64,000 nt of DNA from positions 62,001 to 126,000 of IMG/VR virus record IMGVR_UViG_3300046167_000825. One strand, given 5' to 3'. The position numbers were made by a program, and so were the translations under genes. Every line of letters begins with the position of its first letter. Position 1 is the first letter of the stretch. This document shows positions 2,536 through 29,980 of the stretch, in pieces. The notes under the pieces were generated by a model. It saw only the letters and a program-made list of their open reading frames with translations, had not been told where the DNA came from and did no database searches.

Positions 2536-3447
2536 ATGTCTTTTTCTAATCAAGATCGGATAAATCTCGTCACGAAATCCCTTGTCGCTGGTGTTTTGGA
2601 TGGGAACTCCCTCAGTCAGTGGTATGAAACCCTTTTCCCCTTCACCTTCATGGTGGAGTCTGGGAAGGTTTTGACCCAACTTGATACCATCAGACAACAC
2701 CCCGCTTCGACTATCCTAGAAGCCCAAAACAATGTAGCCCTCCACTTACAAGGCATAGTCGCAGATTATTCTTCTTTGAATACTGCCATTCGATTGACAG
2801 AGGTGACCGACAGCAACAAGACCACATGGGCTGCTTATTCGGTACATGGTGACACTACTTCTCCTATGCTAGACAACTGGATTCAACCACAGTTAGTTCC
2901 CCAAGCAACTGGAAACCCTTCCAACGGTTATGGGATTCTCTTGTGGGATGGTGACCCATCGGCTGGTGGCGAACTGTTGTCCACGACAATCTATATGACG
3001 GGTGTTGGTGCTTCTCGTAGTGTGGCGTGGTTTTGGAACTACTCCAATGGGTTACTGTTGATATCTGAAATGTTCATAGCAGCACGACCAGCCTTTGACC
3101 CTTACATCACGGGTTTTCGTTATATCGGAACATCCATAGGATCAGTTTCGACTGACATCGACATCCTCACCACAGAGATTGAGCAACTGAAAGCCAGTTT
3201 TGATTTGTTTAAGGTCGAGATAGAAACACAAGTGTTGGCTCTCAAGAACATAGTGGAAGGTATCACGGTCACTTCTCTTGGTTCGGGTGTTGAATTAGGT
3301 CAGATGGGTGGCGTAGGAGAAATCGAACTAAAGACCTTGAAGGGAGGTGACCATGTTTCTATCACAGAAGCCAACGGGGAAGTCACCATCACTGTAGAGG
3401 GTGGTTCAAGGACTGGCATGATAACTCGATTTGTGAGAGGAGGTTGA
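2536..3447 (+). CDS. Putative virion structural protein
   Basis: GAGGT RBS. C-terminal SLGSGVELG...LKTLKGG segment resembles the fibre linker motifs in 51906 and 54315. Confidence 0.45.
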   Translation: MSFSNQDRINLVTKSLVAGVLDGNSLSQWYETLFPFTFMVESGKVLTQLDTIRQHPASTILEAQNNVALHLQGIVADYSSLNTAIRLTEVTDSNKTTWAAYSVHGDTTSPMLDNWIQPQLVPQATGNPSNGYGILLWDGDPSAGGELLSTTIYMTGVGASRSVAWFWNYSNGLLLISEMFIAARPAFDPYITGFRYIGTSIGSVSTDIDILTTEIEQLKASFDLFKVEIETQVLALKNIVEGITVTSLGSGVELGQMGGVGEIELKTLKGGDHVSITEANGEVTITVEGGSRTGMITRFVRGG

Positions 3448-3448
3448 T

Positions 3449-5320
3449 ATGGCTATTGTCACTATCGGTAGACCAGCGTATTTCTTTGTTCTCTTTGTAG
3501 ATGAAGACCAAAACCCCGTTTCTGTTGTGGGGACAACCATCCATCTTTTTACTTTTGATGAAGATGCCGAACTCGTTCTTGAAGATGGAGTTATGACACC
3601 CACCAATGAGGTTGGGAAGTTTATGTATTCCTTCATGATCCCAGAAGACTGGAGTTACGATTCCAATCTCTATGCCCACATGAGAGGGACAGACGATAAG
3701 GGTCTTAAATATCTCACAGAGCAACAGTTCGACTTATGGAATGAAGACGGGACACCTTATCGTAAGCCACCCCCACCACCTCCTATGTCGCATTGGAACA
3801 CAGACGATGGTGGTAACGGTGCTGATGGATTTGCTTCCAATACCGATTTGGCTTTCCAAACAGCACGAGTTCCGACAGCAGACGGTGCTGATGGCAACCT
3901 AGTCCTCTCAGAGGCATGGGGGAATACCACTCAAGACAGAGTGACAAAGACTGGTGTGATCGAAATAGACACAGTCGGACACACGACTGGCTTCGGTGGG
4001 GATTCTCAGTTTGTAGTTCGGATTGAGAGTCTTAATCAAGTTTATGAAGAGGTTGTTTTCCCAGCAACGGGGGACATATCTCAGTTCTCTCCTAGTTCGG
4101 TGATACACTTCACCATCACTGATTTCCAAGATGACAATCAAGACCGCAAGAAAGCCTTCGCTAAAGTAGTCCTTGATTTGGATATGTTGGTGAACTCAGT
4201 GGGGAGATGGGGCAGTGTGTTCCGTGTCACGACAACGCACATCACAGACACGGTTTCAGATGGGGGTGGTTCGTATAGCCACACCATCAATACTTTTTAT
4301 TATGATTCCAATCCCGAAACGCCCTCTTTTGATCAAGTGCTTTTTGAGGAAAACCTCCGTGTAGTTCGTCATCTCTCTGGGATTGCGTATTACACCAATG
4401 ACACAGTGTTCCGAGTGACCGTCAAAGACATCAATCACCTCAATAATGCTTCGGCTAAGGCATCCAAGAATCTTACAGTAGAAGCAGTTAATATCGATCT
4501 ACCGAAGTTGGAACACTCCCCTTTTGGAGTTGGTGCGGGTTATTTTTCGAGTTGGGACTCGAAGGTCAATCGGAACTTCGTGGATTACCAAAAAAACGAT
4601 TGGAAAGTCCAAGAGCCGAACTACCGTGTGATTGATCAGAATATTTATGTGCAAGCACACGCTGATGACACATGGAACAATGGGGTCACAAAGATATCCC
4701 CGTCCCTCCCAGTTCTGATTGACACTTACGAACAGACCTCCACCCCTCAATACGATGGTTTCGATGATGAAATCCACCGAACAGAGAGTGATTATGTCAC
4801 TGTTTGGGATAGCCTCAATCATTTGAACTCTGGTCAAGCGTTGGTGCAAGGGGGCTTCTTACAGATACCTCACACAGATTGGTCGCCTTATCTTCCTCTC
4901 GACCCTTTACCGAATCCCGATTACACGGGGATTGGGCAAGGTGCTTCTTATTATAGGACATTTGAAGCGACAGATGACGGAACAATCTCTCACTCAAACC
5001 TAGAGATGAGTATTTTCGGTCAGTTCGTTAATGGTTTGGAACAAGACCTCATCAATGGTGACCTTCAGATTTTCATCCGTAAGAAAGTTTCTGAGTCGGG
5101 TGCATCTGGTGTGAACTCCCCTCCTTTAATGGTTCATGGCACAGCATATAATCACACTCTTTTTGATGATGGTGTCACCAACGGTCAGATTCGTGAGTTT
5201 GTTGTGGGGAACACCCTCTCTGTCACTTTTGGTGGGTATGCTGTTAAAGAGGGGGTGTATATGGAAATCCGTATCACCAACCCTCTAGTAAAAATAGACT
5301 CAATGTCCGTGAGTTTTTAG
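3449..5320 (+). CDS. Putative virion structural protein (beta-rich, Ig-like N-terminus)
   Basis: 623 aa, T/G/D/N-rich, GAGGAGG RBS, structural context. Confidence 0.45.
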   Translation: MAIVTIGRPAYFFVLFVDEDQNPVSVVGTTIHLFTFDEDAELVLEDGVMTPTNEVGKFMYSFMIPEDWSYDSNLYAHMRGTDDKGLKYLTEQQFDLWNEDGTPYRKPPPPPPMSHWNTDDGGNGADGFASNTDLAFQTARVPTADGADGNLVLSEAWGNTTQDRVTKTGVIEIDTVGHTTGFGGDSQFVVRIESLNQVYEEVVFPATGDISQFSPSSVIHFTITDFQDDNQDRKKAFAKVVLDLDMLVNSVGRWGSVFRVTTTHITDTVSDGGGSYSHTINTFYYDSNPETPSFDQVLFEENLRVVRHLSGIAYYTNDTVFRVTVKDINHLNNASAKASKNLTVEAVNIDLPKLEHSPFGVGAGYFSSWDSKVNRNFVDYQKNDWKVQEPNYRVIDQNIYVQAHADDTWNNGVTKISPSLPVLIDTYEQTSTPQYDGFDDEIHRTESDYVTVWDSLNHLNSGQALVQGGFLQIPHTDWSPYLPLDPLPNPDYTGIGQGASYYRTFEATDDGTISHSNLEMSIFGQFVNGLEQDLINGDLQIFIRKKVSESGASGVNSPPLMVHGTAYNHTLFDDGVTNGQIREFVVGNTLSVTFGGYAVKEGVYMEIRITNPLVKIDSMSVSF

Positions 5321-23090: not shown

Positions 23091-23118
23091 GGTCGTTCTG
23101 AGTGTGTGTTTCCGTATA
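23090..23118 (+). promoter_or_regulatory. Variant promoter motif AGGTCG-N15-TCCGTATA
   Basis: Exact -10 element, 30 nt before ATG 23149. Confidence 0.65.
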
Positions 23119-23148
23119 AGGTTCACACACTCAAACTTGGAGAGCACA

Positions 23149-23535
23149 ATGAGAGTAACATCATTCAAAAGTGGTAGTAAGCGTAAATCCAGTATGGAAT
23201 ATTACAAGGATATTTACCTCAATATAAATGGCACTGACACGAAAGTGGGGCTGATTGGTAAAACGGGGTGGGGGGAGTATCTGGAATACCGAGTGTACTT
23301 CTTCAAAAATGACTTTGATGTTGCAAGCAGATCGATGCGTTTGCTCCACCATAATATCAGCCACAATCTCACTCAAAACACATCCCCCAATAAAGATGAA
23401 TCTGTGATCTTGATGCAAACCTACGACAATCTTAAAGAAGCAAATGGCTATGCCAAACGAGTCTTCAAGGACACTAAGACATTAAAGACAGAAATGTTCA
23501 ATGTCTATCTTAAACTACTACAAGCACTTGGGTGA
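23149..23535 (+). CDS. Hypothetical protein, tandem paralogue A
   Basis: LEYRVYF...TLKTEMFNVYLKLLQALG. GGAG RBS. Confidence 0.65.
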   Translation: MRVTSFKSGSKRKSSMEYYKDIYLNINGTDTKVGLIGKTGWGEYLEYRVYFFKNDFDVASRSMRLLHHNISHNLTQNTSPNKDESVILMQTYDNLKEANGYAKRVFKDTKTLKTEMFNVYLKLLQALG

Positions 23536-23590: not shown

Positions 23591-23926
23591 TTGACCGACA
23601 TAGATTCGCAAATGCTGGGATCGATGGTGATATACCGAAAATGCCTAGATATCCAATGGCACACCAAAGACAAGAAATACCTCAAACTAGGTGCGTTGAC
23701 TCCCATCAAAATGGGGAAGGGACTCATTGAGTACCGTGTGTTTTATGTATGTCCCAATTATAAGATGGGGAGTTCCAATAACTCTCACGATGGTTGGATT
23801 CTCATGGATATCTTCCCTAGCGAAGAAGAAGCCAAGGAATACATACACAGTGTGTTTCACAGCAAAGAAACCTTAAAAGAAGAAATGTTTAATATATACA
23901 TCAAACTCCTACAACCAATTGGGTAA
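23591..23926 (+). CDS. Hypothetical protein, tandem paralogue B
   Basis: IEYRVFY...TLKEEMFNIYIKLLQPIG. Start uncertain. Confidence 0.6.
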   Translation: MTDIDSQMLGSMVIYRKCLDIQWHTKDKKYLKLGALTPIKMGKGLIEYRVFYVCPNYKMGSSNNSHDGWILMDIFPSEEEAKEYIHSVFHSKETLKEEMFNIYIKLLQPIG

Positions 23927-24760: not shown

Positions 24761-25354
24761 ATGACTATACTATCCATAAATCAAGGGGATTGCTTGGAGC
24801 ATTTGACAACGATGCCAGACGGTTCTGTTGACAGTGTATTGTGTGATCCACCCTATGGGTTGAAGTTCTTCTCACACAACGGTGGGTTTGATAACATAGG
24901 GAACGCCACCCAACAGAAAGAATGGCATCGTGAATGGGTGACACACGCATATCGGCTGTTGAAACCCAACGGTGTTATCAAAGCCTTTTCTAGTCCACGA
25001 ACTCTGCACCATCTGTTGGCGATAATGGTGGAGATCGGCTTTGAGGTGTCCGTAGATTCTTGGTTGTATGTGTCTGGGCGACCAAAGACCATTGATGTGG
25101 CAAAGAGTATTACGGCTTACGAACTAACGGGTTCTTCCTATCAAGGGAAGTTCCACGAACTATCCAAAGGACACAAGAGGTCGAAACTAGACATAGACGA
25201 CTATGTGAATCGAGGGAAGTTCTTCACAAAGGGGCATCAAGAAACCCTAGATTTTGAACTAACCGAGAACGGTCAGAAATGGGATGGATGGCAGTACGGA
25301 TTGAAACCAGCATTTGAACCAATAATTATGGGCTATAAAGGAGCAAAACAATGA
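24761..25354 (+). CDS. N4/N6 DNA methyltransferase, N-terminal catalytic module only (N1)
   Basis: GDCLE, CDPPY, RLLKPNG, YVSGRPK, LKPAFEP. Stops without an FxGxG motif. Confidence 0.8.
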   Translation: MTILSINQGDCLEHLTTMPDGSVDSVLCDPPYGLKFFSHNGGFDNIGNATQQKEWHREWVTHAYRLLKPNGVIKAFSSPRTLHHLLAIMVEIGFEVSVDSWLYVSGRPKTIDVAKSITAYELTGSSYQGKFHELSKGHKRSKLDIDDYVNRGKFFTKGHQETLDFELTENGQKWDGWQYGLKPAFEPIIMGYKGAKQ

Positions 25355-27261
25355 CAACATTAACACTAATGAATGGCGATTGTGTCGCCAAGATGAAAGA
25401 GATGGCAGACGAATCTGTGGATGCTGTTCTGTGTGACCCCCCGTACGGACTGAAGTTCATGAACAAGGATTTCGATGATTTGGGTGAGGGGAAACAACAG
25501 AGAGAGTGGCATGTCCAATGGGTGAAAGAAGCCTTTCGAGTTCTGAAACCGAATGGGGTTATGAAAGCCTTTGGGGGAACTAGAACCTACCAACATCTTC
25601 TTGCAGCAATGGCAGAAGTGGGATTCTCTGTTGACCTTTCTGTCTGGGCATACGGATGTCTATCGGAAGACACCGAAATACTTACGGGCGAAGGGTGGGT
25701 TGAACAATCAAAACTCAATAATGGTTCTATGGTTGTGTCCTATTGTATAGACAAGGACACTTATCAAGTGCAAGCCGTTGAGGAGGTAGTTCGATATGAA
25801 TACAAGGATACCGCTTACAGAATACAATCAGATCATACAGACCAAATCGTGTCCCGAAACCATCGTTGCATTGTTGAACGAGAGGGAGAAAGAACTTTTC
25901 TTTTCGCAGAACACTTGCAAGCAAACGAAGTCGTACCCTTTGTGGAGAGTGTGTCGATACGAGGGTTGCGAAACGATCTTTCAAACGGATACAACACGGC
26001 ACGGGCTAAGAAAGAAACTCTGTTCGACCATTCGAGCACACTATCCGACAAAGACTTGCAAGGGGTGTCACAAGGAGTTTCAAACCAGAGAGAAAACAAC
26101 AAAGTATTGTTCGAGGGCATGTCGACCACCTACATGGGTGACGAAAGTATGCAAGGGGTGCAACAAAGAGTTTCAAACAAAGAGATCCTCACAGACTTGG
26201 TGCAAGCGAGAATGTATGACACTGCCGAAGATCACAAAAGAGTGTCAAGGTTGTGGGAAAGAGTTTCAAGTACCAGATGGGAAAGTGGGGCGAGCAAGGT
26301 TGTATTGCAAGCAAGAATGTCAGAGGAAACCAAAGGTGGAATTGACTTGTTATGTCTGCCAAAAGGTGATCCTAGTGAGAGCAAGAAGATTAGAGCGAGC
26401 AAAAAATCCAACTTGTTCAAGGCAGTGCAACGGAGTTCTGAGGGGCGAGGAATGGAAAGCACACGCTCACAAGGGGCGGGCGAACTGGTCACAAGAGAGC
26501 GAACAAGCCTTAGTGGAGAGAATGACGGGAAGCACCAACCCAGCGTGGAAGGGTGGGGTGACCTATCGCAATCGCAAGGGGAACTACATAACTCAGAGTA
26601 TCGCTTATGTGAGATGCCCAACCGAGTACACCTCAATGGCGAGGAAAGACGGGTATGTGATGGAACATCGTTTGAAAGTGGCACAAGCAGTTGGCAGACC
26701 ACTGACGAGAACCGAATGTGTTCATCACATCAATCACAACGCAGAGGACAATCGGTTGGAGAACTTGATGTTGTTCAAGAACAATCGGGATCACAAACTG
26801 TACGAAGCACATGGGAAACCCGAACCACTTTGGCAACCGTCACCCCAATAGAGTACGAGGGCATTGTATGGTGTGTGAAAGTACCAACGGGTGCTTTTGT
26901 CGCTAGACGGAATGGCAAGGTCTTTGTTACGGGGAACTCTGGCTTCCCAAAATCCCTGAATATAAGTAAGAAACTGGACTCAAGACATAAAGCCCGAACG
27001 GGTGAGGAAGGGGCTATCATTGGTTTCACGAAAGGAGTTGGTGGCGAGAACATCAATGATATCGTGGCTGGTAAAGAAGTGCGAACCACAGATGAAGAAG
27101 GTGGCAAAGGTGTGGGTGCTTACGGTACGGGTGCGAAGCAAGTAGCCGTTGATGTTCCCGTCAGAGAGTGGGTCACAGACGAAGCGAAGACTTGGGAAGG
27201 CTGGGGCACGTCTTTGAAGCCAGCCTTTGAGCCAGTGTGTGTAGGATACAAAAGAGTATGA
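25351..27261 (+). CDS. N4/N6 DNA methyltransferase N-terminal module (N2) containing an intein
   Basis: GDCVA, CDPPY, RVLKPNG, AYG|CLSEDTEILT...VFVTGN|SGFPKS, LKPAFEP. No FxGxG motif. Confidence 0.85.
   Translation: MTTLTLMNGDCVAKMKEMADESVDAVLCDPPYGLKFMNKDFDDLGEGKQQREWHVQWVKEAFRVLKPNGVMKAFGGTRTYQHLLAAMAEVGFSVDLSVWAYGCLSEDTEILTGEGWVEQSKLNNGSMVVSYCIDKDTYQVQAVEEVVRYEYKDTAYRIQSDHTDQIVSRNHRCIVEREGERTFLFAEHLQANEVVPFVESVSIRGLRNDLSNGYNTARAKKETLFDHSSTLSDKDLQGVSQGVSNQRENNKVLFEGMSTTYMGDESMQGVQQRVSNKEILTDLVQARMYDTAEDHKRVSRLWERVSSTRWESGASKVVLQARMSEETKGGIDLLCLPKGDPSESKKIRASKKSNLFKAVQRSSEGRGMESTRSQGAGELVTRERTSLSGENDGKHQPSVEGWGDLSQSQGELHNSEYRLCEMPNRVHLNGEERRVCDGTSFESGTSSWQTTDENRMCSSHQSQRRGQSVGELDVVQEQSGSQTVRSTWETRTTLATVTPIEYEGIVWCVKVPTGAFVARRNGKVFVTGNSGFPKSLNISKKLDSRHKARTGEEGAIIGFTKGVGGENINDIVAGKEVRTTDEEGGKGVGAYGTGAKQVAVDVPVREWVTDEAKTWEGWGTSLKPAFEPVCVGYKRV
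25781..25787 (+). promoter_or_regulatory. Internal Shine-Dalgarno AGGAGGT for the nested HNH ORF
   Basis: 8 nt before ATG 25796, encoded within intein codons. Confidence 0.7.
25796..26851 (+). CDS. HNH homing endonuclease with four CxxC...CxxxC Zn repeats, overprinted inside the intein in a different frame
   Basis: GYVMEHRL...VHHINHNAEDNRLENL (HNH_3-like), NPAWKGG, repeated CKGC.KEFQ...CSRAC, own RBS. Confidence 0.88.
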   Translation: MNTRIPLTEYNQIIQTKSCPETIVALLNEREKELFFSQNTCKQTKSYPLWRVCRYEGCETIFQTDTTRHGLRKKLCSTIRAHYPTKTCKGCHKEFQTREKTTKYCSRACRPPTWVTKVCKGCNKEFQTKRSSQTWCKRECMTLPKITKECQGCGKEFQVPDGKVGRARLYCKQECQRKPKVELTCYVCQKVILVRARRLERAKNPTCSRQCNGVLRGEEWKAHAHKGRANWSQESEQALVERMTGSTNPAWKGGVTYRNRKGNYITQSIAYVRCPTEYTSMARKDGYVMEHRLKVAQAVGRPLTRTECVHHINHNAEDNRLENLMLFKNNRDHKLYEAHGKPEPLWQPSPQ

Positions 27262-27329
27262 CTTTTCTTGCGAACCACTATTTTGTCTGCTACCCTAATA
27301 CAACCAACCAACAGCGAAAGGAGTTTGTT

Positions 27330-27941
27330 ATGGATTGTGTGTGTAAGGGCTGTGGGAAAGACTTTCGTGTTTCTCCCAGTGTTATCCGAAAGGGTGGTGG
27401 TAAGTATTGTTCAAGGGCTTGCACGAAAAAAGGTGAGAACCGAGAGTGTCCTACATGTGGTTCGCAGTTTTATGTCAAGAACGCAGAAATCAAGAGGGGC
27501 TATGGCACATACTGTTCGAGAGAGTGTGCCAACCCAGCACGAGGATTGAGTGGTGAAAACCATCCTCAATGGAAGGGTGGTAAGTACAAGCATGGTGACG
27601 GTTATATAATGGTGCGTGTAGGCACGGATAAATACGAACTAGAGCATCGTGTAGTGATGGCGAACCATTTGGGTCGGGAACTGAAAACCCACGAGCATGT
27701 TCATCACATCAATGGTGTGAAGGATGACAACCGTATAGAGAATCTTGAACTGACTACGGCAAGCCAGCACACGAAAGAGCATCACGCTCCCAAGAAGGAT
27801 TTATCGACTTGGATGGCAGTCGCTTGTTTGAGTTGTGGGAATGTCTTCGCTGAACGGAAGAAAAAGGTAGAGAGAAACCCGAACTGTTTTTGCAACAGAG
27901 ATTGTTATATCGCTGGCAAGAAAAAGAGAGTTGTGCAATGA
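27330..27941 (+). CDS. Free-standing HNH endonuclease with Zn-ribbon repeats
   Basis: AAGGAG RBS before ATG 27330. HPQWKGG, LEHRVVM...HVHHINGVKDDNRIENL. Confidence 0.88.
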   Translation: MDCVCKGCGKDFRVSPSVIRKGGGKYCSRACTKKGENRECPTCGSQFYVKNAEIKRGYGTYCSRECANPARGLSGENHPQWKGGKYKHGDGYIMVRVGTDKYELEHRVVMANHLGRELKTHEHVHHINGVKDDNRIENLELTTASQHTKEHHAPKKDLSTWMAVACLSCGNVFAERKKKVERNPNCFCNRDCYIAGKKKRVVQ

Positions 27942-28225: not shown

Positions 28226-28285
28226 CAGATTTTTGGAAAAAACTAGATGAGGCTTTCGCCTATATCTTTCAAACAAAGAAGAAAA

Positions 28286-29980
28286 ATGACAATACTAAAA
28301 TTAATGAAAGGCGATTGCCTCGAAAAAATGAAGAACCTTGAAAGTTCTTCTGTCCCCTCTATCTTATGCGACCCACCTTACGGCTTGGAGTTCATCACTG
28401 AACTAGAAGGGAAATCACGGAACTTGATGAACCCCACTAGCGAAGCAGATATCAAACGGAAAGAAGACTATGGGAACTCGTACGCTGGGCGTGCCTCCAA
28501 CCTTCCCGATTTGGGTAAGTTCGGACAGTATGGGAAAGGGGTACAAGAGTGGCACAAGGGTTGGGTTGGGGCTTGTCATAGGGTATTGTCAGAAGACGGC
28601 TCGTTGATGGCTTTCAATTCCAGCAAGACCTCTCACCGAATGATAGCCGCTATGGTCGAACTAGGGTTTCACATTTCTATTGATGCTTGGGTATATCTGT
28701 CTGGGATGCCCAAAGCACGAGACTTAGGGGCTGGTGTAGGTTGGTATACAAACTTGAAGCCCTCTTATGAACCTATCATTGTGTGCCGAAAACAAAAAGG
28801 AGAAACTATGCACAAATCACATTTAATTTATATCGGACGGAAGCCTTTGAGCGAGAGGAACATCGCAGAGAATGTTTTGAAGCACGGGACGGGTGCGATG
28901 AACATTGATGCTTGTCGAATAGGTGACGAGGAGCGAACTTACACGGGAAGTGGTGAATCTCAAATGAGATACAATGACGACCGTGCTGGTTTGGCAGATG
29001 GGAGAGGAAAAGAACTTGAGTTCACGGTAAAAGGTCGATGGCCCGCAAACTCTATCTTCTCTAGTTCATGTGCCAAGATTCTTACAAAGCAGATTGGGGC
29101 AGAGGCTTCCACTTATTTTTTCATTTCTGAGGATCGTTTTGATAACCACAATTCGTATAACAACAACAAGGAGAACACTATGAATGTACCATCAGATTTA
29201 TTAGACTATTTACACACGATGATTACCCCCACACATGTGGGAGGGGAAAGTCTCATCATCCAAGAGGGCTTGAACGATCACGACTTCAGCCAATACACCG
29301 ACAATCAATGGCACGGTTGTATCGCTGTTGGAACACCGACAGAGGAAACAAGCAAGGAACTTATGAGAGTCATGAAGGCTGGTGCTCATTTGATGTTGAT
29401 AGCCCCCGAAGAAGAACCCACTGGTTATAAGGGTGCTTGTCAGATTGAGGACACGGGATTTGAAATCAGAGATTCTATATTTTGGGCGAGAGAAACCGAC
29501 CCAGAGAATCCCAACTTCATGTACATGCCAAAGGCTTCACGGAGTGAGAGAGAACTAGGCACAGAGCATTTGAAAAAAGTCAGTGGTGCTGAAGCCGTTG
29601 ATCGGAAAGAAGGTTCTGCTGGGATGGACAACCCCCGTGCTGGTGCTGGTAGAACAGCCACAGAGATTGGTAATTTTCATCCGACTGTCAAGCCCATTGG
29701 GATTATGGAATGGTTGGCTCGTGATGTACCAAAAGGTGCGACAGTTCTAGACCCATTTATGGGTTCTGGCACTATGGGTATCGCTTGTGTGAAGACGGGA
29801 CACTCTTATATAGGCACAGAGATTGACGAGAGTTACTTCCCTATTGCAGATGCTCGTATCCGTCATTGGAATGAAACCTATTGTGCTTGGGATAGTGCTG
29901 AGGTCATTTCTGACCTAGATGAGGAAGAGACAGAGGATGTCCTAGCCCCTATCGACTTGAACAGTTTCTTGGGTTTTTAG
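28286..29980 (+). CDS. Beta-class N4/N6 DNA methyltransferase: N module (N3) + middle module + C module
   Basis: CDPPY, YLSGMPK, IGRKPL...NIDACRI...GRWPAN, HPTVKP, DPFMGSG. In-frame AAGGAG+ATG at 28808 and 29180. Confidence 0.85.
   Translation: MTILKLMKGDCLEKMKNLESSSVPSILCDPPYGLEFITELEGKSRNLMNPTSEADIKRKEDYGNSYAGRASNLPDLGKFGQYGKGVQEWHKGWVGACHRVLSEDGSLMAFNSSKTSHRMIAAMVELGFHISIDAWVYLSGMPKARDLGAGVGWYTNLKPSYEPIIVCRKQKGETMHKSHLIYIGRKPLSERNIAENVLKHGTGAMNIDACRIGDEERTYTGSGESQMRYNDDRAGLADGRGKELEFTVKGRWPANSIFSSSCAKILTKQIGAEASTYFFISEDRFDNHNSYNNNKENTMNVPSDLLDYLHTMITPTHVGGESLIIQEGLNDHDFSQYTDNQWHGCIAVGTPTEETSKELMRVMKAGAHLMLIAPEEEPTGYKGACQIEDTGFEIRDSIFWARETDPENPNFMYMPKASRSERELGTEHLKKVSGAEAVDRKEGSAGMDNPRAGAGRTATEIGNFHPTVKPIGIMEWLARDVPKGATVLDPFMGSGTMGIACVKTGHSYIGTEIDESYFPIADARIRHWNETYCAWDSAEVISDLDEEETEDVLAPIDLNSFLGF

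What the first reader, a model, noticed from the sequence alone, without database searches (positions are those of the whole stretch)
25657..26937. Intein with an HNH homing endonuclease overprinted in another reading frame
Seen: a 427-aa intein (CLSEDTEILT...SRNH...VTGN|S) whose central region reads as featureless sequence. The +1 frame (25796-26851) encodes a coherent 351-aa protein with four Zn repeats and an HNH motif, and has a perfect AGGAGGT RBS 8 nt upstream. The two frames overlap even across intein block B and the start of block F. The intein frame stays free of stops across about 350 codons, whereas the equivalent frame of the free-standing HNH at 27330 is closed (e.g. ggt aag, gct gaa). 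Established: intein endonucleases are normally in-frame domains. Inference: the endonuclease is translated separately while the intein frame is kept open as a spacer. I recall reports of hidden alternate-frame HNH genes in phage methylase insertions, so the principle may have precedent and needs a literature check.
Basis: partly seen in the sequence, partly recalled or inferred. Interest (0 to 1): 0.9.

Follow-up and report, generated by a model that had tools for sequence, protein, structure and literature searches.

The report
Intein with out-of-frame HNH endonuclease
A self-splicing protein insert (intein) in a large phage's DNA methylase gene carries its homing nuclease as a separate gene read one base out of step, and over 130 related metagenomic and MAG sequences keep both reading frames open; the principle was published in 2025-26, but this large family was not.

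Summary
Window 25351-27261 encodes an N6/N4 DNA methyltransferase interrupted by a 427-aa class-1 intein (25657-26937). A 351-aa zinc-ribbon HNH endonuclease ORF (25796-26851) lies in the +1 frame, with GAGGAGGT 8 nt upstream of its ATG. The intein frame has 0 stops across the HNH ORF, against 19.3±2.9 expected.

It is not a one-off. Among relatives, 69 distinct nested copies have 0 host-frame stops against about 824 expected, always with the same frame offset. With the intein N-domain alone as bait, 71 of 74 complete inteins carry the HNH at +1.

In the HNH core, dN/dS is 0.12 in the HNH frame and 2.4 in the intein frame. Over the intein's N-terminal splicing domain the intein frame dominates. 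AF2 folds the intein ends as a HINT domain and leaves the middle disordered.

The same HNH family also sits out of frame, without any intein, in a loop of the same methylases (ShiLan-like).

The principle has 2025-26 precedents: the ShiLan hidden HNH, actinophage inteins with out-of-frame EndoVII-like nucleases, and the cyanobacterial dnaX intein. I found no report of an out-of-frame HNH inside an intein, so I file it as a new variant of a known kind. Translation, splicing and cleavage are untested.

The parts
25351..25656 (+). N-extein: N-terminal part of an N6/N4 DNA methyltransferase (DPPY motif), ending ..VWAYG
   Evidence: Pfam N6_N4_Mtase E 1.3e-9, residues 23-101. 37% identical to Mycobacterium phage Bobi gp73 methylase across the same junction.
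25657..26937 (+). Class-1 intein, 427 aa, C1 ... TGN followed by S+1
   Evidence: Sequence. 61 homologous inteins lie at the same YG|C...TGN|SGFPK site. C1, H69, R70, T425, G426 and N427 are invariant in 54 sequences. HINT fold by AF2 and Foldseek.
25657..25956 (+). Intein N-terminal splicing domain (blocks A and B, SRNH)
   Evidence: AF2 pLDDT 95-98 for residues 1-100. Codon-position entropy shows the intein frame is the constrained one here.
25780..25787 (+). Shine-Dalgarno-like GAGGAGGT, 8 nt upstream of the HNH ATG
   Evidence: AGGAGG also precedes other long ORFs of the window, at 3449, 5331, 38164 and 38630. SD cores accompany the homologous ATG in 14 of 26 relatives, against 6 of 28 without that ATG.
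25796..26851 (+). Nested HNH endonuclease ORF, 351 aa, +1 frame relative to the intein
   Evidence: Pfam HNH_3 above gathering score. phrog_1271 E 2.5e-20. AF2 mean pLDDT 79.5. dN/dS 0.117 in this frame.
25958..26271 (+). Four tandem Zn-ribbon modules (CxGC.KEFQ...), spaced 99/93/93 nt; a fifth ribbon follows
   Evidence: the repeat finder family D1. All spacings are multiples of 3, so both frames are preserved.
26723..26794 (+). HNH catalytic motif (H310, H311, N323, N330, H333 of the nested ORF)
   Evidence: These residues are invariant in 69 aligned family members. The Pfam HNH_3 match covers residues 291-331.
26809..26937 (+). Intein C-terminal splicing domain (blocks F and G, ..VWCVKVPTGAFVARRNGKVFVTGN)
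   Evidence: AF2 pLDDT 96-98 from about residue 385. 60-90% identical across relatives. Nearly identical in Bobi gp73.
26938..27261 (+). C-extein (SGFPKSLNISK ... GWGTSLKPAFEP...), a short form ending after the KPxFEP motif
   Evidence: The short form is shared with the diverged relative L003.
24761..25354 (+). Intein-less paralogous half-methylase (..WLYV-SGRPK..) immediately upstream
   Evidence: Pfam N6_N4_Mtase. The junction DNA is only 27/60 identical to the intein host's joined flanks.
27330..27941 (+). Free-standing HNH relative (203 aa) just downstream
   Evidence: 30% identical to the nested HNH. Both of its alternative frames are closed, with 10 and 12 stops.

Best explanation
This is a genuine class-1 intein inserted at the conserved YG|SGFPK site of a phage N6/N4 DNA methyltransferase. 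Its homing-endonuclease module is not an in-frame domain. It is a complete zinc-ribbon HNH gene read in the +1 frame.

Proposed mechanism:
1. Ribosomes translating the methylase read straight through the HNH DNA. They produce about 280 residues of disordered spacer between the two halves of the HINT splicing domain.
2. The intein then excises itself and ligates the methylase (inferred).
3. The HNH protein is made separately by internal initiation at the SD-ATG at 25780-25798, which lies inside the intein's N-terminal splicing domain (inferred).
4. The HNH cuts intein-less methylase alleles and so drives homing of the whole element (inferred).

Selection is partitioned:
- The HNH frame is under purifying selection in the centre.
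- The intein frame is under purifying selection at both ends.
- Across the centre the intein frame is constrained only to contain no stop codon. This is achieved by never letting an HNH codon ending in T precede a codon starting with AA, AG or GA.
For: Shown:
- Anatomy and signals are as described.
- Stop avoidance in the window is 0 against 19.3±2.9 expected.
- In 69 distinct nested relatives it is 0 against about 824 expected. T before dangerous codons is 0 of 5,020, against 3,324 of 13,151 elsewhere. Two free-standing relatives have 18 and 20 stops in that frame.
- 78 of 81 HNH-baited loci are nested at the same offset.
- 71 of 74 complete inteins found with the N-domain alone carry the HNH at +1.
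- 20 of 24 genome/MAG loci are nested in the same way.
- In the HNH core, codon-position entropy is 0.91/0.73/1.46, so HNH third positions are the most variable. In the N-domain overlap it is 0.59/1.07/0.83, so intein third positions are the most variable.
- dN/dS is 0.117 in the HNH frame and 2.43 in the host frame, in 12 of 12 pairs.
- AF2 gives intein residues 1-100 and 385-427 pLDDT above 95 and residues 101-385 below 50. Foldseek's top hits are inteins and HINT domains, E 1.5e-5.
- Catalytic H/N residues are invariant in 69 sequences.
- A TAG in the HNH frame two codons before the ATG argues for independent initiation rather than a frameshift fusion.
- The intein is more similar than its flanking exteins in all 9 pairs tested, for example 97% against 83/72% and 89% against 57/50%. 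This is a mobility signature.
- Decayed alleles exist: internal in-frame HNH deletions and a 145-aa mini-intein. They fit a homing cycle.
- Mycobacteriophage Bobi gp73 has a homologous intein at the same site with an ordinary in-frame endonuclease region.
- A penultimate Gly is compatible with efficient splicing in a phage intein (PMC5050341).
Against: - No expression, splicing or cleavage data exist.
- Pfam's Intein_splicing model matches only below its gathering score (18.6 against 35.8 bits).
- The start site is not universal. The homologous ATG is present in 26 of 54 distinct relatives, and only 14 of those have an SD core. Others must use upstream ATGs.
- Whole-chain Foldseek of the HNH model found nothing significant (I-HmuI only at E 3.8), and a profile search of PDB sequences found only zinc fingers. 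The HNH assignment therefore rests on Pfam, PHROGs and conserved residues.
- The window's extein is a short half-methylase lacking the SAM-binding part, so its own function is uncertain.
- The higher similarity of the intein than of the exteins could partly reflect double coding constraint.
Confidence: 0.78

Rival explanations
1. The insertion does not splice. The whole 427-residue read-through stays in the methylase as a tolerated insertion, as proposed for the ShiLan domain, and only the HNH matters.
For: The same HNH family sits out of frame with no intein at all in a loop of homologous methylases about 10 codons downstream. Read-through peptides of this kind are evidently tolerated there. 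The Pfam intein model is below threshold.
Against: C1, block-B His, terminal Asn and +1 Ser are invariant or nearly so in 54 sequences. The ends fold as a HINT domain with pLDDT above 95 and match solved inteins. The intein frame is the constrained frame over the N-domain. The site interrupts a conserved YG-SGFPK motif rather than a variable loop. The homologous Bobi intein belongs to a recognised mycobacteriophage methylase intein group.
Confidence: 0.07
2. The HNH is not initiated independently. It is produced by programmed +1 ribosomal frameshifting (or another recoding event) from the intein frame, giving a fusion of intein N-domain and HNH.
For: The start codon position is not conserved in about half of the relatives. 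In several, the HNH frame is open from near the intein start.
Against: In the window and at least 9 relatives, a stop in the HNH frame lies within 15 nt upstream of the conserved ATG. A strong SD sits at the optimal distance. The last upstream stop is scattered between offsets 7 and 136, as expected if nothing upstream of the start is constrained. No slippery motif was identified, though none was systematically searched for.
Confidence: 0.06
3. The HNH ORF is a decaying relic of an invasion and no longer functions. Only the intein frame is under selection.
For: Truncated and deleted HNH remnants and a mini-intein exist among relatives.
Against: The ORF is intact in 69 distinct copies, with invariant catalytic residues. 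dN/dS is 0.117 in the HNH frame. Third-position variability follows the HNH frame. Inteins are more similar than their exteins.
Confidence: 0.03
4. It is an artefact: an ordinary intein with an in-frame HNH domain that appears out of frame because of two compensating assembly or sequencing indels.
For: The contig is a metagenomic assembly (IMG/VR UViG).
Against: The same offset recurs in more than 130 independent contigs from different samples. An artefact would not explain a stop-free second frame or the partitioned selection.
Confidence: 0.01
5. The insertion is a group I (or other) self-splicing intron carrying an HNH ORF.
For: HNH ORFs are common in phage group I introns (established knowledge).
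Against: No Rfam family matches 25300-27400 at E up to 1. The host frame is open throughout and encodes conserved intein blocks.
Confidence: 0.01

Closest known systems
[quoted passage not shown]
   Same: A bona fide intein whose central region is featureless in frame, while an overlapping same-strand frame encodes a free-standing-type nuclease. The authors propose origin by invasion of an intein by a free-standing endonuclease gene.
   Different: There the nuclease is EndoVII-like, in frame 3 (+2). [quoted passage not shown] Here the nuclease is a Zn-ribbon HNH_3 protein in frame 2 (+1). The host is an N6/N4 methylase, and the ORF starts inside the N-terminal splicing domain and overlaps block B.
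Cyanobacterial dnaX intein with an out-of-frame LAGLIDADG endonuclease (Phillips, DeSimone & Gogarten, bioRxiv 10.64898/2026.09.14.751524; noted earlier by Gorbalenya 1998 as cited there)
   Same: A disordered in-frame centre and a confident fold in the alternative frame. SD motifs precede the nested start. Selection is frame-dependent, with low omega in the nuclease frame and raised omega in the intein frame. Mini-intein alleles co-occur.
   Different: LAGLIDADG rather than HNH, +2 rather than +1, and a cellular rather than a phage host gene.
ShiLan domain: hidden out-of-frame HNH in mycobacteriophage DNA methylases (Arsenault, Gosselin & Gogarten, Genes 2025, PMC11855218; also Applejack, PMC12613952)
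   Same: It involves the same methylase family and a Zn-finger HNH read out of frame, with no stop in the host frame. The ShiLan-type HNH of phage Mantra is a distant homologue (31% identity). At least 14 relatives of the window's HNH are inserted without an intein in the loop after SGFPKSLN, which is a ShiLan-like arrangement.
   Different: ShiLan has no detectable splicing domain, its HNH is in frame 3 (verified for Mantra gp64), and no RBS was found. The window's element is inside a clear intein, in frame 2, with a strong SD.
Mycobacteriophage DNA methylase inteins (DNMT-1/2; Kelley et al., mBio 2016, PMC5050341), e.g. Bobi gp73
   Same: Same insertion site (..YG|C...TGN|SGFPKSL) and homologous splicing blocks. 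Block F/G and the C-extein start are almost identical.
   Different: In Bobi the region between the splicing blocks is an ordinary in-frame domain. It has LAGLIDADG-like motifs by eye; I did not run it against Pfam. No long nested HNH ORF is present there.
Fractured genes: split inteins separated by a free-standing endonuclease gene (Dassa et al., NAR 2009, PMC2677866)
   Same: A free-standing-type nuclease gene sits between the two halves of an intein splicing domain. Both papers discuss the same evolutionary route.
   Different: There the host gene is broken into two ORFs and splicing is in trans. Here one uninterrupted ORF is preserved.

Membership tests
Intein (class 1, HINT domain) | N-terminal Cys/Ser nucleophile, block-B His, C-terminal Asn, and Ser/Thr/Cys at +1 | tested here: met
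   The intein has C1..SRNH.. with H69, and ..TGN followed by S. C1, H69, R70, G426 and N427 are invariant in 54 homologues. The penultimate residue is Gly, not His. That is known to be compatible with splicing in a phage intein (PMC5050341).
Intein (class 1, HINT domain) | HINT fold formed by the N- and C-terminal segments | tested here: met
   AF2 pLDDT is above 95 for residues 1-100 and 385-427. Foldseek top hits are split inteins, mini-inteins, BIL and hedgehog HINT domains, E from 1.5e-5. The Pfam Intein_splicing match is only sub-threshold.
Intein (class 1, HINT domain) | In-frame insertion in a conserved motif of a host protein, with intein-free alleles | tested here: met
   The insertion lies between YG and SGFPK. 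Intein-less paralogues occur in the same window, and intein-less methylases with YGSGFPKSL occur among relatives.
Intein (class 1, HINT domain) | Protein splicing activity | not testable with these tools
   Needs an expression or splicing assay.
HNH (His-Me finger) homing endonuclease, Pfam HNH_3 | Profile match above the curated threshold and a conserved H-N-H motif | tested here: met
   HNH_3 scores 28.3 bits against a 24.8 cut-off. Eleven PHROG HNH families match, best E 2.5e-20. H310, H311, N323, N330 and H333 are invariant in 69 sequences.
HNH (His-Me finger) homing endonuclease, Pfam HNH_3 | Structural match to solved HNH nucleases | tested here: inconclusive
   Whole-chain Foldseek gave I-HmuI only at E 3.8. 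The PDB sequence profile search found zinc fingers only. The multi-domain beads-on-a-string model probably defeats whole-chain comparison.
HNH (His-Me finger) homing endonuclease, Pfam HNH_3 | Site-specific cleavage of the empty allele, and homing | not testable with these tools
   Evidence is indirect only. Inteins are more similar than flanking exteins in 9 of 9 pairs, and decayed and mini-intein alleles exist.
Inteins with an out-of-frame, separately translated homing endonuclease (2025-26 reports) | Nuclease ORF overlapping the intein centre in another frame of the same strand, with the intein frame uninterrupted | tested here: met
Inteins with an out-of-frame, separately translated homing endonuclease (2025-26 reports) | Purifying selection on the nuclease frame and relaxed selection on the overlapping intein frame | tested here: met
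   dN/dS is 0.117 against 2.43. Codon-position entropy agrees.
Inteins with an out-of-frame, separately translated homing endonuclease (2025-26 reports) | Own translation start signals | tested here: inconclusive
   The window has a strong SD-ATG. Across relatives, the homologous ATG is in 26 of 54 and an SD core in 14 of those.
ShiLan-domain type hidden HNH (PMC11855218) | Insertion without intein splicing motifs; HNH in frame 3 of the methylase | tested here: not met
   The window's element has intein blocks and a HINT fold and its HNH is in frame 2. Mantra gp64 was verified as frame 3. Related loop-nested copies resemble ShiLan in lacking an intein, but they are also in frame 2.
Group I intron with HNH ORF | Conserved intron RNA structure; host frame normally interrupted | tested here: not met
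   No Rfam match at E up to 1. The host frame is open.
Split intein / fractured gene (Dassa 2009) | Host gene divided into two ORFs by the nuclease gene | tested here: not met
   A single 636-aa ORF spans the element.

The most novel reading that the evidence does not exclude
The unit of mobility may be the HNH gene itself rather than the intein. On this reading it is a 'frame-transparent' cassette that has evolved a permanently stop-free -1 frame. It can therefore be dropped into any tolerant spot of a protein-coding gene without breaking it.

The same cassette, always at the same +1 offset, is found in two contexts of the same methylases: the endonuclease slot of an intein, and a surface loop with no splicing element. 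The two contexts are interleaved on the HNH tree, with at least 3 switches forced by well-supported branches. Free-standing members inside the clade have lost the open frame, with 18 and 20 stops.

If true, this links the ShiLan-type hidden HNHs and the out-of-frame-endonuclease inteins as two outcomes of one strategy. It would also show, in one family, an intein acquiring (or shedding) its nuclease.
Probability: 0.35. Interest if true: 0.75.

Novelty: new variant of a known kind. Interest (0 to 1): 0.6.

Why it matters
Inteins are textbook examples of a splicing domain fused in frame to a homing endonuclease. How the two came together is a long-standing question, often framed as 'splicing first, nuclease invades later'.

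This family gives a large natural data set, with more than 130 independent contigs. In it a free-standing-type HNH gene occupies an intein's nuclease slot without being fused to it. The family also includes decayed alleles, mini-intein alleles and intein-less loop alleles. It therefore makes the invasion model directly testable.

It is also one of the cleanest cases of an absolute 'no stop codon' constraint on an otherwise unselected frame: 0 observed against about 824 expected. That makes it useful as a benchmark for methods that detect overlapping genes.

Practically, standard gene callers will annotate only the methylase ORF and miss the nuclease. Intein surveys will classify such elements as inteins with an 'unknown' or 'degenerate' endonuclease domain.

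Tried and rejected
- Group I intron: Rfam with permissive thresholds found nothing.
- Assembly artefact: rejected by recurrence in independent contigs and by the open second frame.
- Structural confirmation of the HNH by whole-chain Foldseek against the PDB gave no significant hit. A profile search of PDB sequences returned only C2H2 zinc fingers. I did not have a third structure job to fold the HNH core alone.
- Tandem Repeats Finder missed the Zn-ribbon repeats. The repeat finder found them.
I re-aligned without it.
- dN/dS for the short N-terminal overlap could not be computed, because no pair met the length and identity filters. Codon-position entropy was used there instead.
- A first intein-versus-extein identity script with free end gaps gave spurious 100% values for two pairs. 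I redid it with MAFFT global alignments.
- blastn and tblastn against GenBank phages found only one close relative, an unannotated 484-kb uncultured phage, and distant ShiLan-type hits.
- I did not use the large protein-database searches. The locus scans already gave DNA, which the frame analysis needs.
Full report
**1. What is there**

The window is part of the replication region of a large phage. It carries an SNF2 helicase, a DnaB-like helicase and a family-A DNA polymerase. It comes from a 289-kb IMG/VR contig.

ORF 25351..27261 (636 aa) starts as an N6/N4 DNA methyltransferase (Pfam E 1.3e-9). After ..VWAYG it continues into a 427-residue insertion. The insertion begins with Cys (25657), contains ..SRNH.., and ends ..VTGN (26937). 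It is followed by SGFPKSLNISK and the rest of the methylase fold up to ..KPAFEP...

A second ORF, 25796..26851 (351 aa), lies entirely inside the insertion, one base out of step (+1). It matches Pfam HNH_3 above the gathering score. It also matches eleven PHROG families annotated as HNH endonuclease, best E 2.5e-20.

This ORF has four tandem CxxC...C..C zinc-ribbon modules spaced 99, 93 and 93 nt apart, all multiples of three. A fifth ribbon and the HNH motif follow.

GAGGAGGT lies 8 nt upstream of its ATG. A TAG in the HNH frame sits inside that SD, two codons before the ATG.

**2. Is it more than chance?**

The intein frame has no stop across the 351 HNH codons. Shuffling synonymous codons of the HNH ORF gives 19.3±2.9 stops in that frame, with a minimum of 9 in 20,000 shuffles. 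Permuting codon order gives 18.4±3.3.

The mechanism is visible. None of the 106 codons preceding an AA-, AG- or GA-initial codon ends in T, whereas 61 of the other 244 do. The remaining frame has 20 stops. The free-standing HNH paralogue at 27330-27941 (30% identical) has 10 and 12 stops in its alternative frames.

**3. It is a family, not a curiosity**

Three scans gave the same picture.

- **HNH protein as bait, IMG/VR.** This scan gave 120 confirmed relatives, of which 80 were fetched. With one GenBank huge phage added, 78 of 81 loci have the HNH ORF completely spanned by an open frame at the same relative offset. The other frame is always closed.
  - 61 of these loci have a homologous intein at the same ..YG|C(L)S(E/D)DTE...TGN|SGFPK site, 269-427 aa long.
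  - Over 69 distinct nested copies, observed host-frame stops total 0, against about 824 expected.
  - T before dangerous codons is 0 of 5,020, against 3,324 of 13,151 elsewhere.
  - Two free-standing relatives (L023, L077) have 18 and 20 stops in that frame.
- **Intein N-terminal domain alone as bait.** This bait is independent of the nuclease. 71 of 74 complete inteins carry the HNH core at +1. The exceptions are two inteins with internal in-frame deletions of the HNH (L089, L156) and a 145-aa mini-intein whose +1 frame is closed (L162).
- **GTDB genomes and MAGs.** 20 of 24 hits are nested in the same way.

**4. Which frame is selected where?**

In the HNH core (residues 181-340), nucleotide entropy by HNH codon position is 0.91/0.73/1.46. 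The HNH third position is the free one, and the intein's third position is the most constrained.

In the first 45 HNH codons, which overlap the intein's N-terminal splicing domain, entropy is 0.59/1.07/0.83. There the intein's third position is the free one.

Nei-Gojobori estimates over the core give median dN/dS of 0.117 in the HNH frame and 2.43 in the intein frame, in 12 of 12 pairs.

So each frame rules its own segment. In the centre the intein frame is kept only stop-free.

**5. Is the intein real?**

- C1, the block-B His, Arg70, Thr-Gly-Asn at the end and Ser+1 are invariant or nearly so in 54 homologues.
- AF2 on that alignment gives pLDDT 95-98 for residues 1-100 and about 385-427, and below 50 for almost everything between.
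- Foldseek places the confident part among solved inteins, BIL and hedgehog HINT domains, E from 1.5e-5.
- Mycobacteriophage Bobi gp73 has the same insertion site and near-identical block F/G, but an ordinary in-frame domain between the blocks.
- Such methylase inteins are a recognised mycobacteriophage group. A phage intein with a penultimate Gly splices efficiently (PMC5050341).
- No Rfam family, including introns, matches the region.

**6. Is the HNH real and expressed?**

- The catalytic H/N residues are invariant in 69 sequences, and the AF2 model is confident (mean pLDDT 79.5).
- Whole-chain structure and PDB sequence searches were uninformative.
- The window's SD-ATG is strong, and AGGAGG precedes other long ORFs here.
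- The ATG arises from a Tyr codon (TAT) followed by a G-initial codon. It occurs at the homologous position in 26 of 54 distinct relatives.
  - 14 of those have an SD core, against 6 of 28 without the ATG (Fisher p = 0.02).
  - The SD is encoded by different amino acids in different relatives (VEEV, PERSF, PLRSF, PIRSF, PKRSF). That points to selection on the RNA signal.
- The other relatives have TAC at this position and possess ATGs 40-55 nt further upstream. The start is therefore plausible but not uniform.
- Expression is an inference.

**7. Mobility**

In all nine pairs examined, the intein is more similar than the 270 nt of extein on either side. Examples are L013/L016 at 97% against 83% and 72%, and L008/L016 at 89% against 57% and 50%.

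Together with the decayed and mini-intein alleles, this fits an active homing cycle. Double coding may contribute to the slower divergence.

**8. An unexpected link**

At least fourteen viral loci, and several genome loci, carry the same HNH family at the same +1 offset with no intein. It lies in the variable loop that follows SGFPKSLN.. and precedes G(T)ALKPxxEP of complete N6/N4 methylases.

This is the arrangement published as the ShiLan domain. However, the ShiLan-type HNH (phage Mantra gp64) is only 31% identical and lies in frame 3.

On a quick maximum-likelihood tree of the HNH proteins, intein-nested and loop-nested copies are interleaved. Well-supported branches force at least three switches.

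**9. Comparison with the literature**

- Out-of-frame HNH in phage methylases without an intein: PMC11855218 and PMC12613952.
- Inteins with out-of-frame EndoVII-like, antisense LAGLIDADG or VSR-like nucleases in actinophages: bioRxiv 10.1101/2025.01.02.630785. That survey lists HNH only as an in-frame type, and lists methylases only among canonical hosts.
- Cyanobacterial dnaX intein with a +2-frame LAGLIDADG, SD motifs and frame-dependent omega: bioRxiv 10.64898/2026.09.14.751524.
- Three full-text searches found no report of an out-of-frame HNH inside an intein. The library is incomplete, so this is not proof of absence.

**10. Verdict**

The principle is already published.

The new points are:
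- the nuclease class and frame;
- the overlap with splicing block B;
- the size and uniformity of the family;
- the apparent exchange between intein and intein-less contexts.

I file it as a new variant of a known kind, with interest 0.6.

Noticed in passing
window 24761-25354, 25351-27261 (exteins), 28247-29980: Three tandem paralogous N6/N4 methylase genes. The first two are N-terminal 'DPPY halves' that stop right after the KPxFEP motif. Only the third carries the SAM-binding C-terminal part. The short form of the intein host is shared with the diverged relative L003, so it is not a recent truncation. Whether the halves work with a partner is unknown.
   Followed up: partly
window 27330-27941: A free-standing Zn-ribbon HNH gene, 30% identical to the nested one, lies directly downstream of the intein-bearing methylase. 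Both of its alternative frames are closed. It served as a natural control.
   Followed up: yes
window 25958-26271: Zn-ribbon modules of the nested HNH are tandemly repeated with periods of 99/93/93 nt. This expansion in multiples of three makes the window's intein about 85 aa longer than the typical 340 aa. AF2 is least confident for these extra ribbons, residues 92-138.
   Followed up: partly
L089:2221-2817, L156:2501-3034, L162:2029-2463: Decay series of the same intein. There are two alleles with internal in-frame deletions that remove the HNH catalytic core, and one 145-aa mini-intein whose +1 frame is full of stops.
   Followed up: yes
L171:28-1424: In this Verrucomicrobia MAG contig, the shadow frame over the HNH and the intein C-terminus plus extein are in different frames. 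The host reading frame is therefore broken, either as a pseudogene or through a sequencing error.
   Followed up: no
L177:1781-3043 (Curtobacterium pusillum plasmid pCPAA3): A 420-aa free-standing relative of the HNH on an actinobacterial plasmid, not nested in a methylase.
   Followed up: no
window 25796-25890 (HNH residues 1-30): AF2 predicts two helices with pLDDT about 90-96 for the HNH N-terminus. This segment is merely the +1 reading of the intein's N-terminal splicing domain, and there the intein frame dominates selection. It could be a real structural element or an artefact of borrowed conservation.
   Followed up: no
window 23104-23535 and 23591-23926: Two adjacent small ORFs (143 and 111 aa) share a similar C-terminal tail (..TLK.EMFN.Y.KLLQ..G) and look like paralogues of unknown function.
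   Followed up: no
L001 (LR756508.1, 484-kb uncultured phage) 3247-4302: The only GenBank phage record with a close relative is an unannotated huge-phage genome. It has a 352-aa intein (CITPDTE...TGN|SGFPK) and a nested HNH at the same offset.
   Followed up: partly
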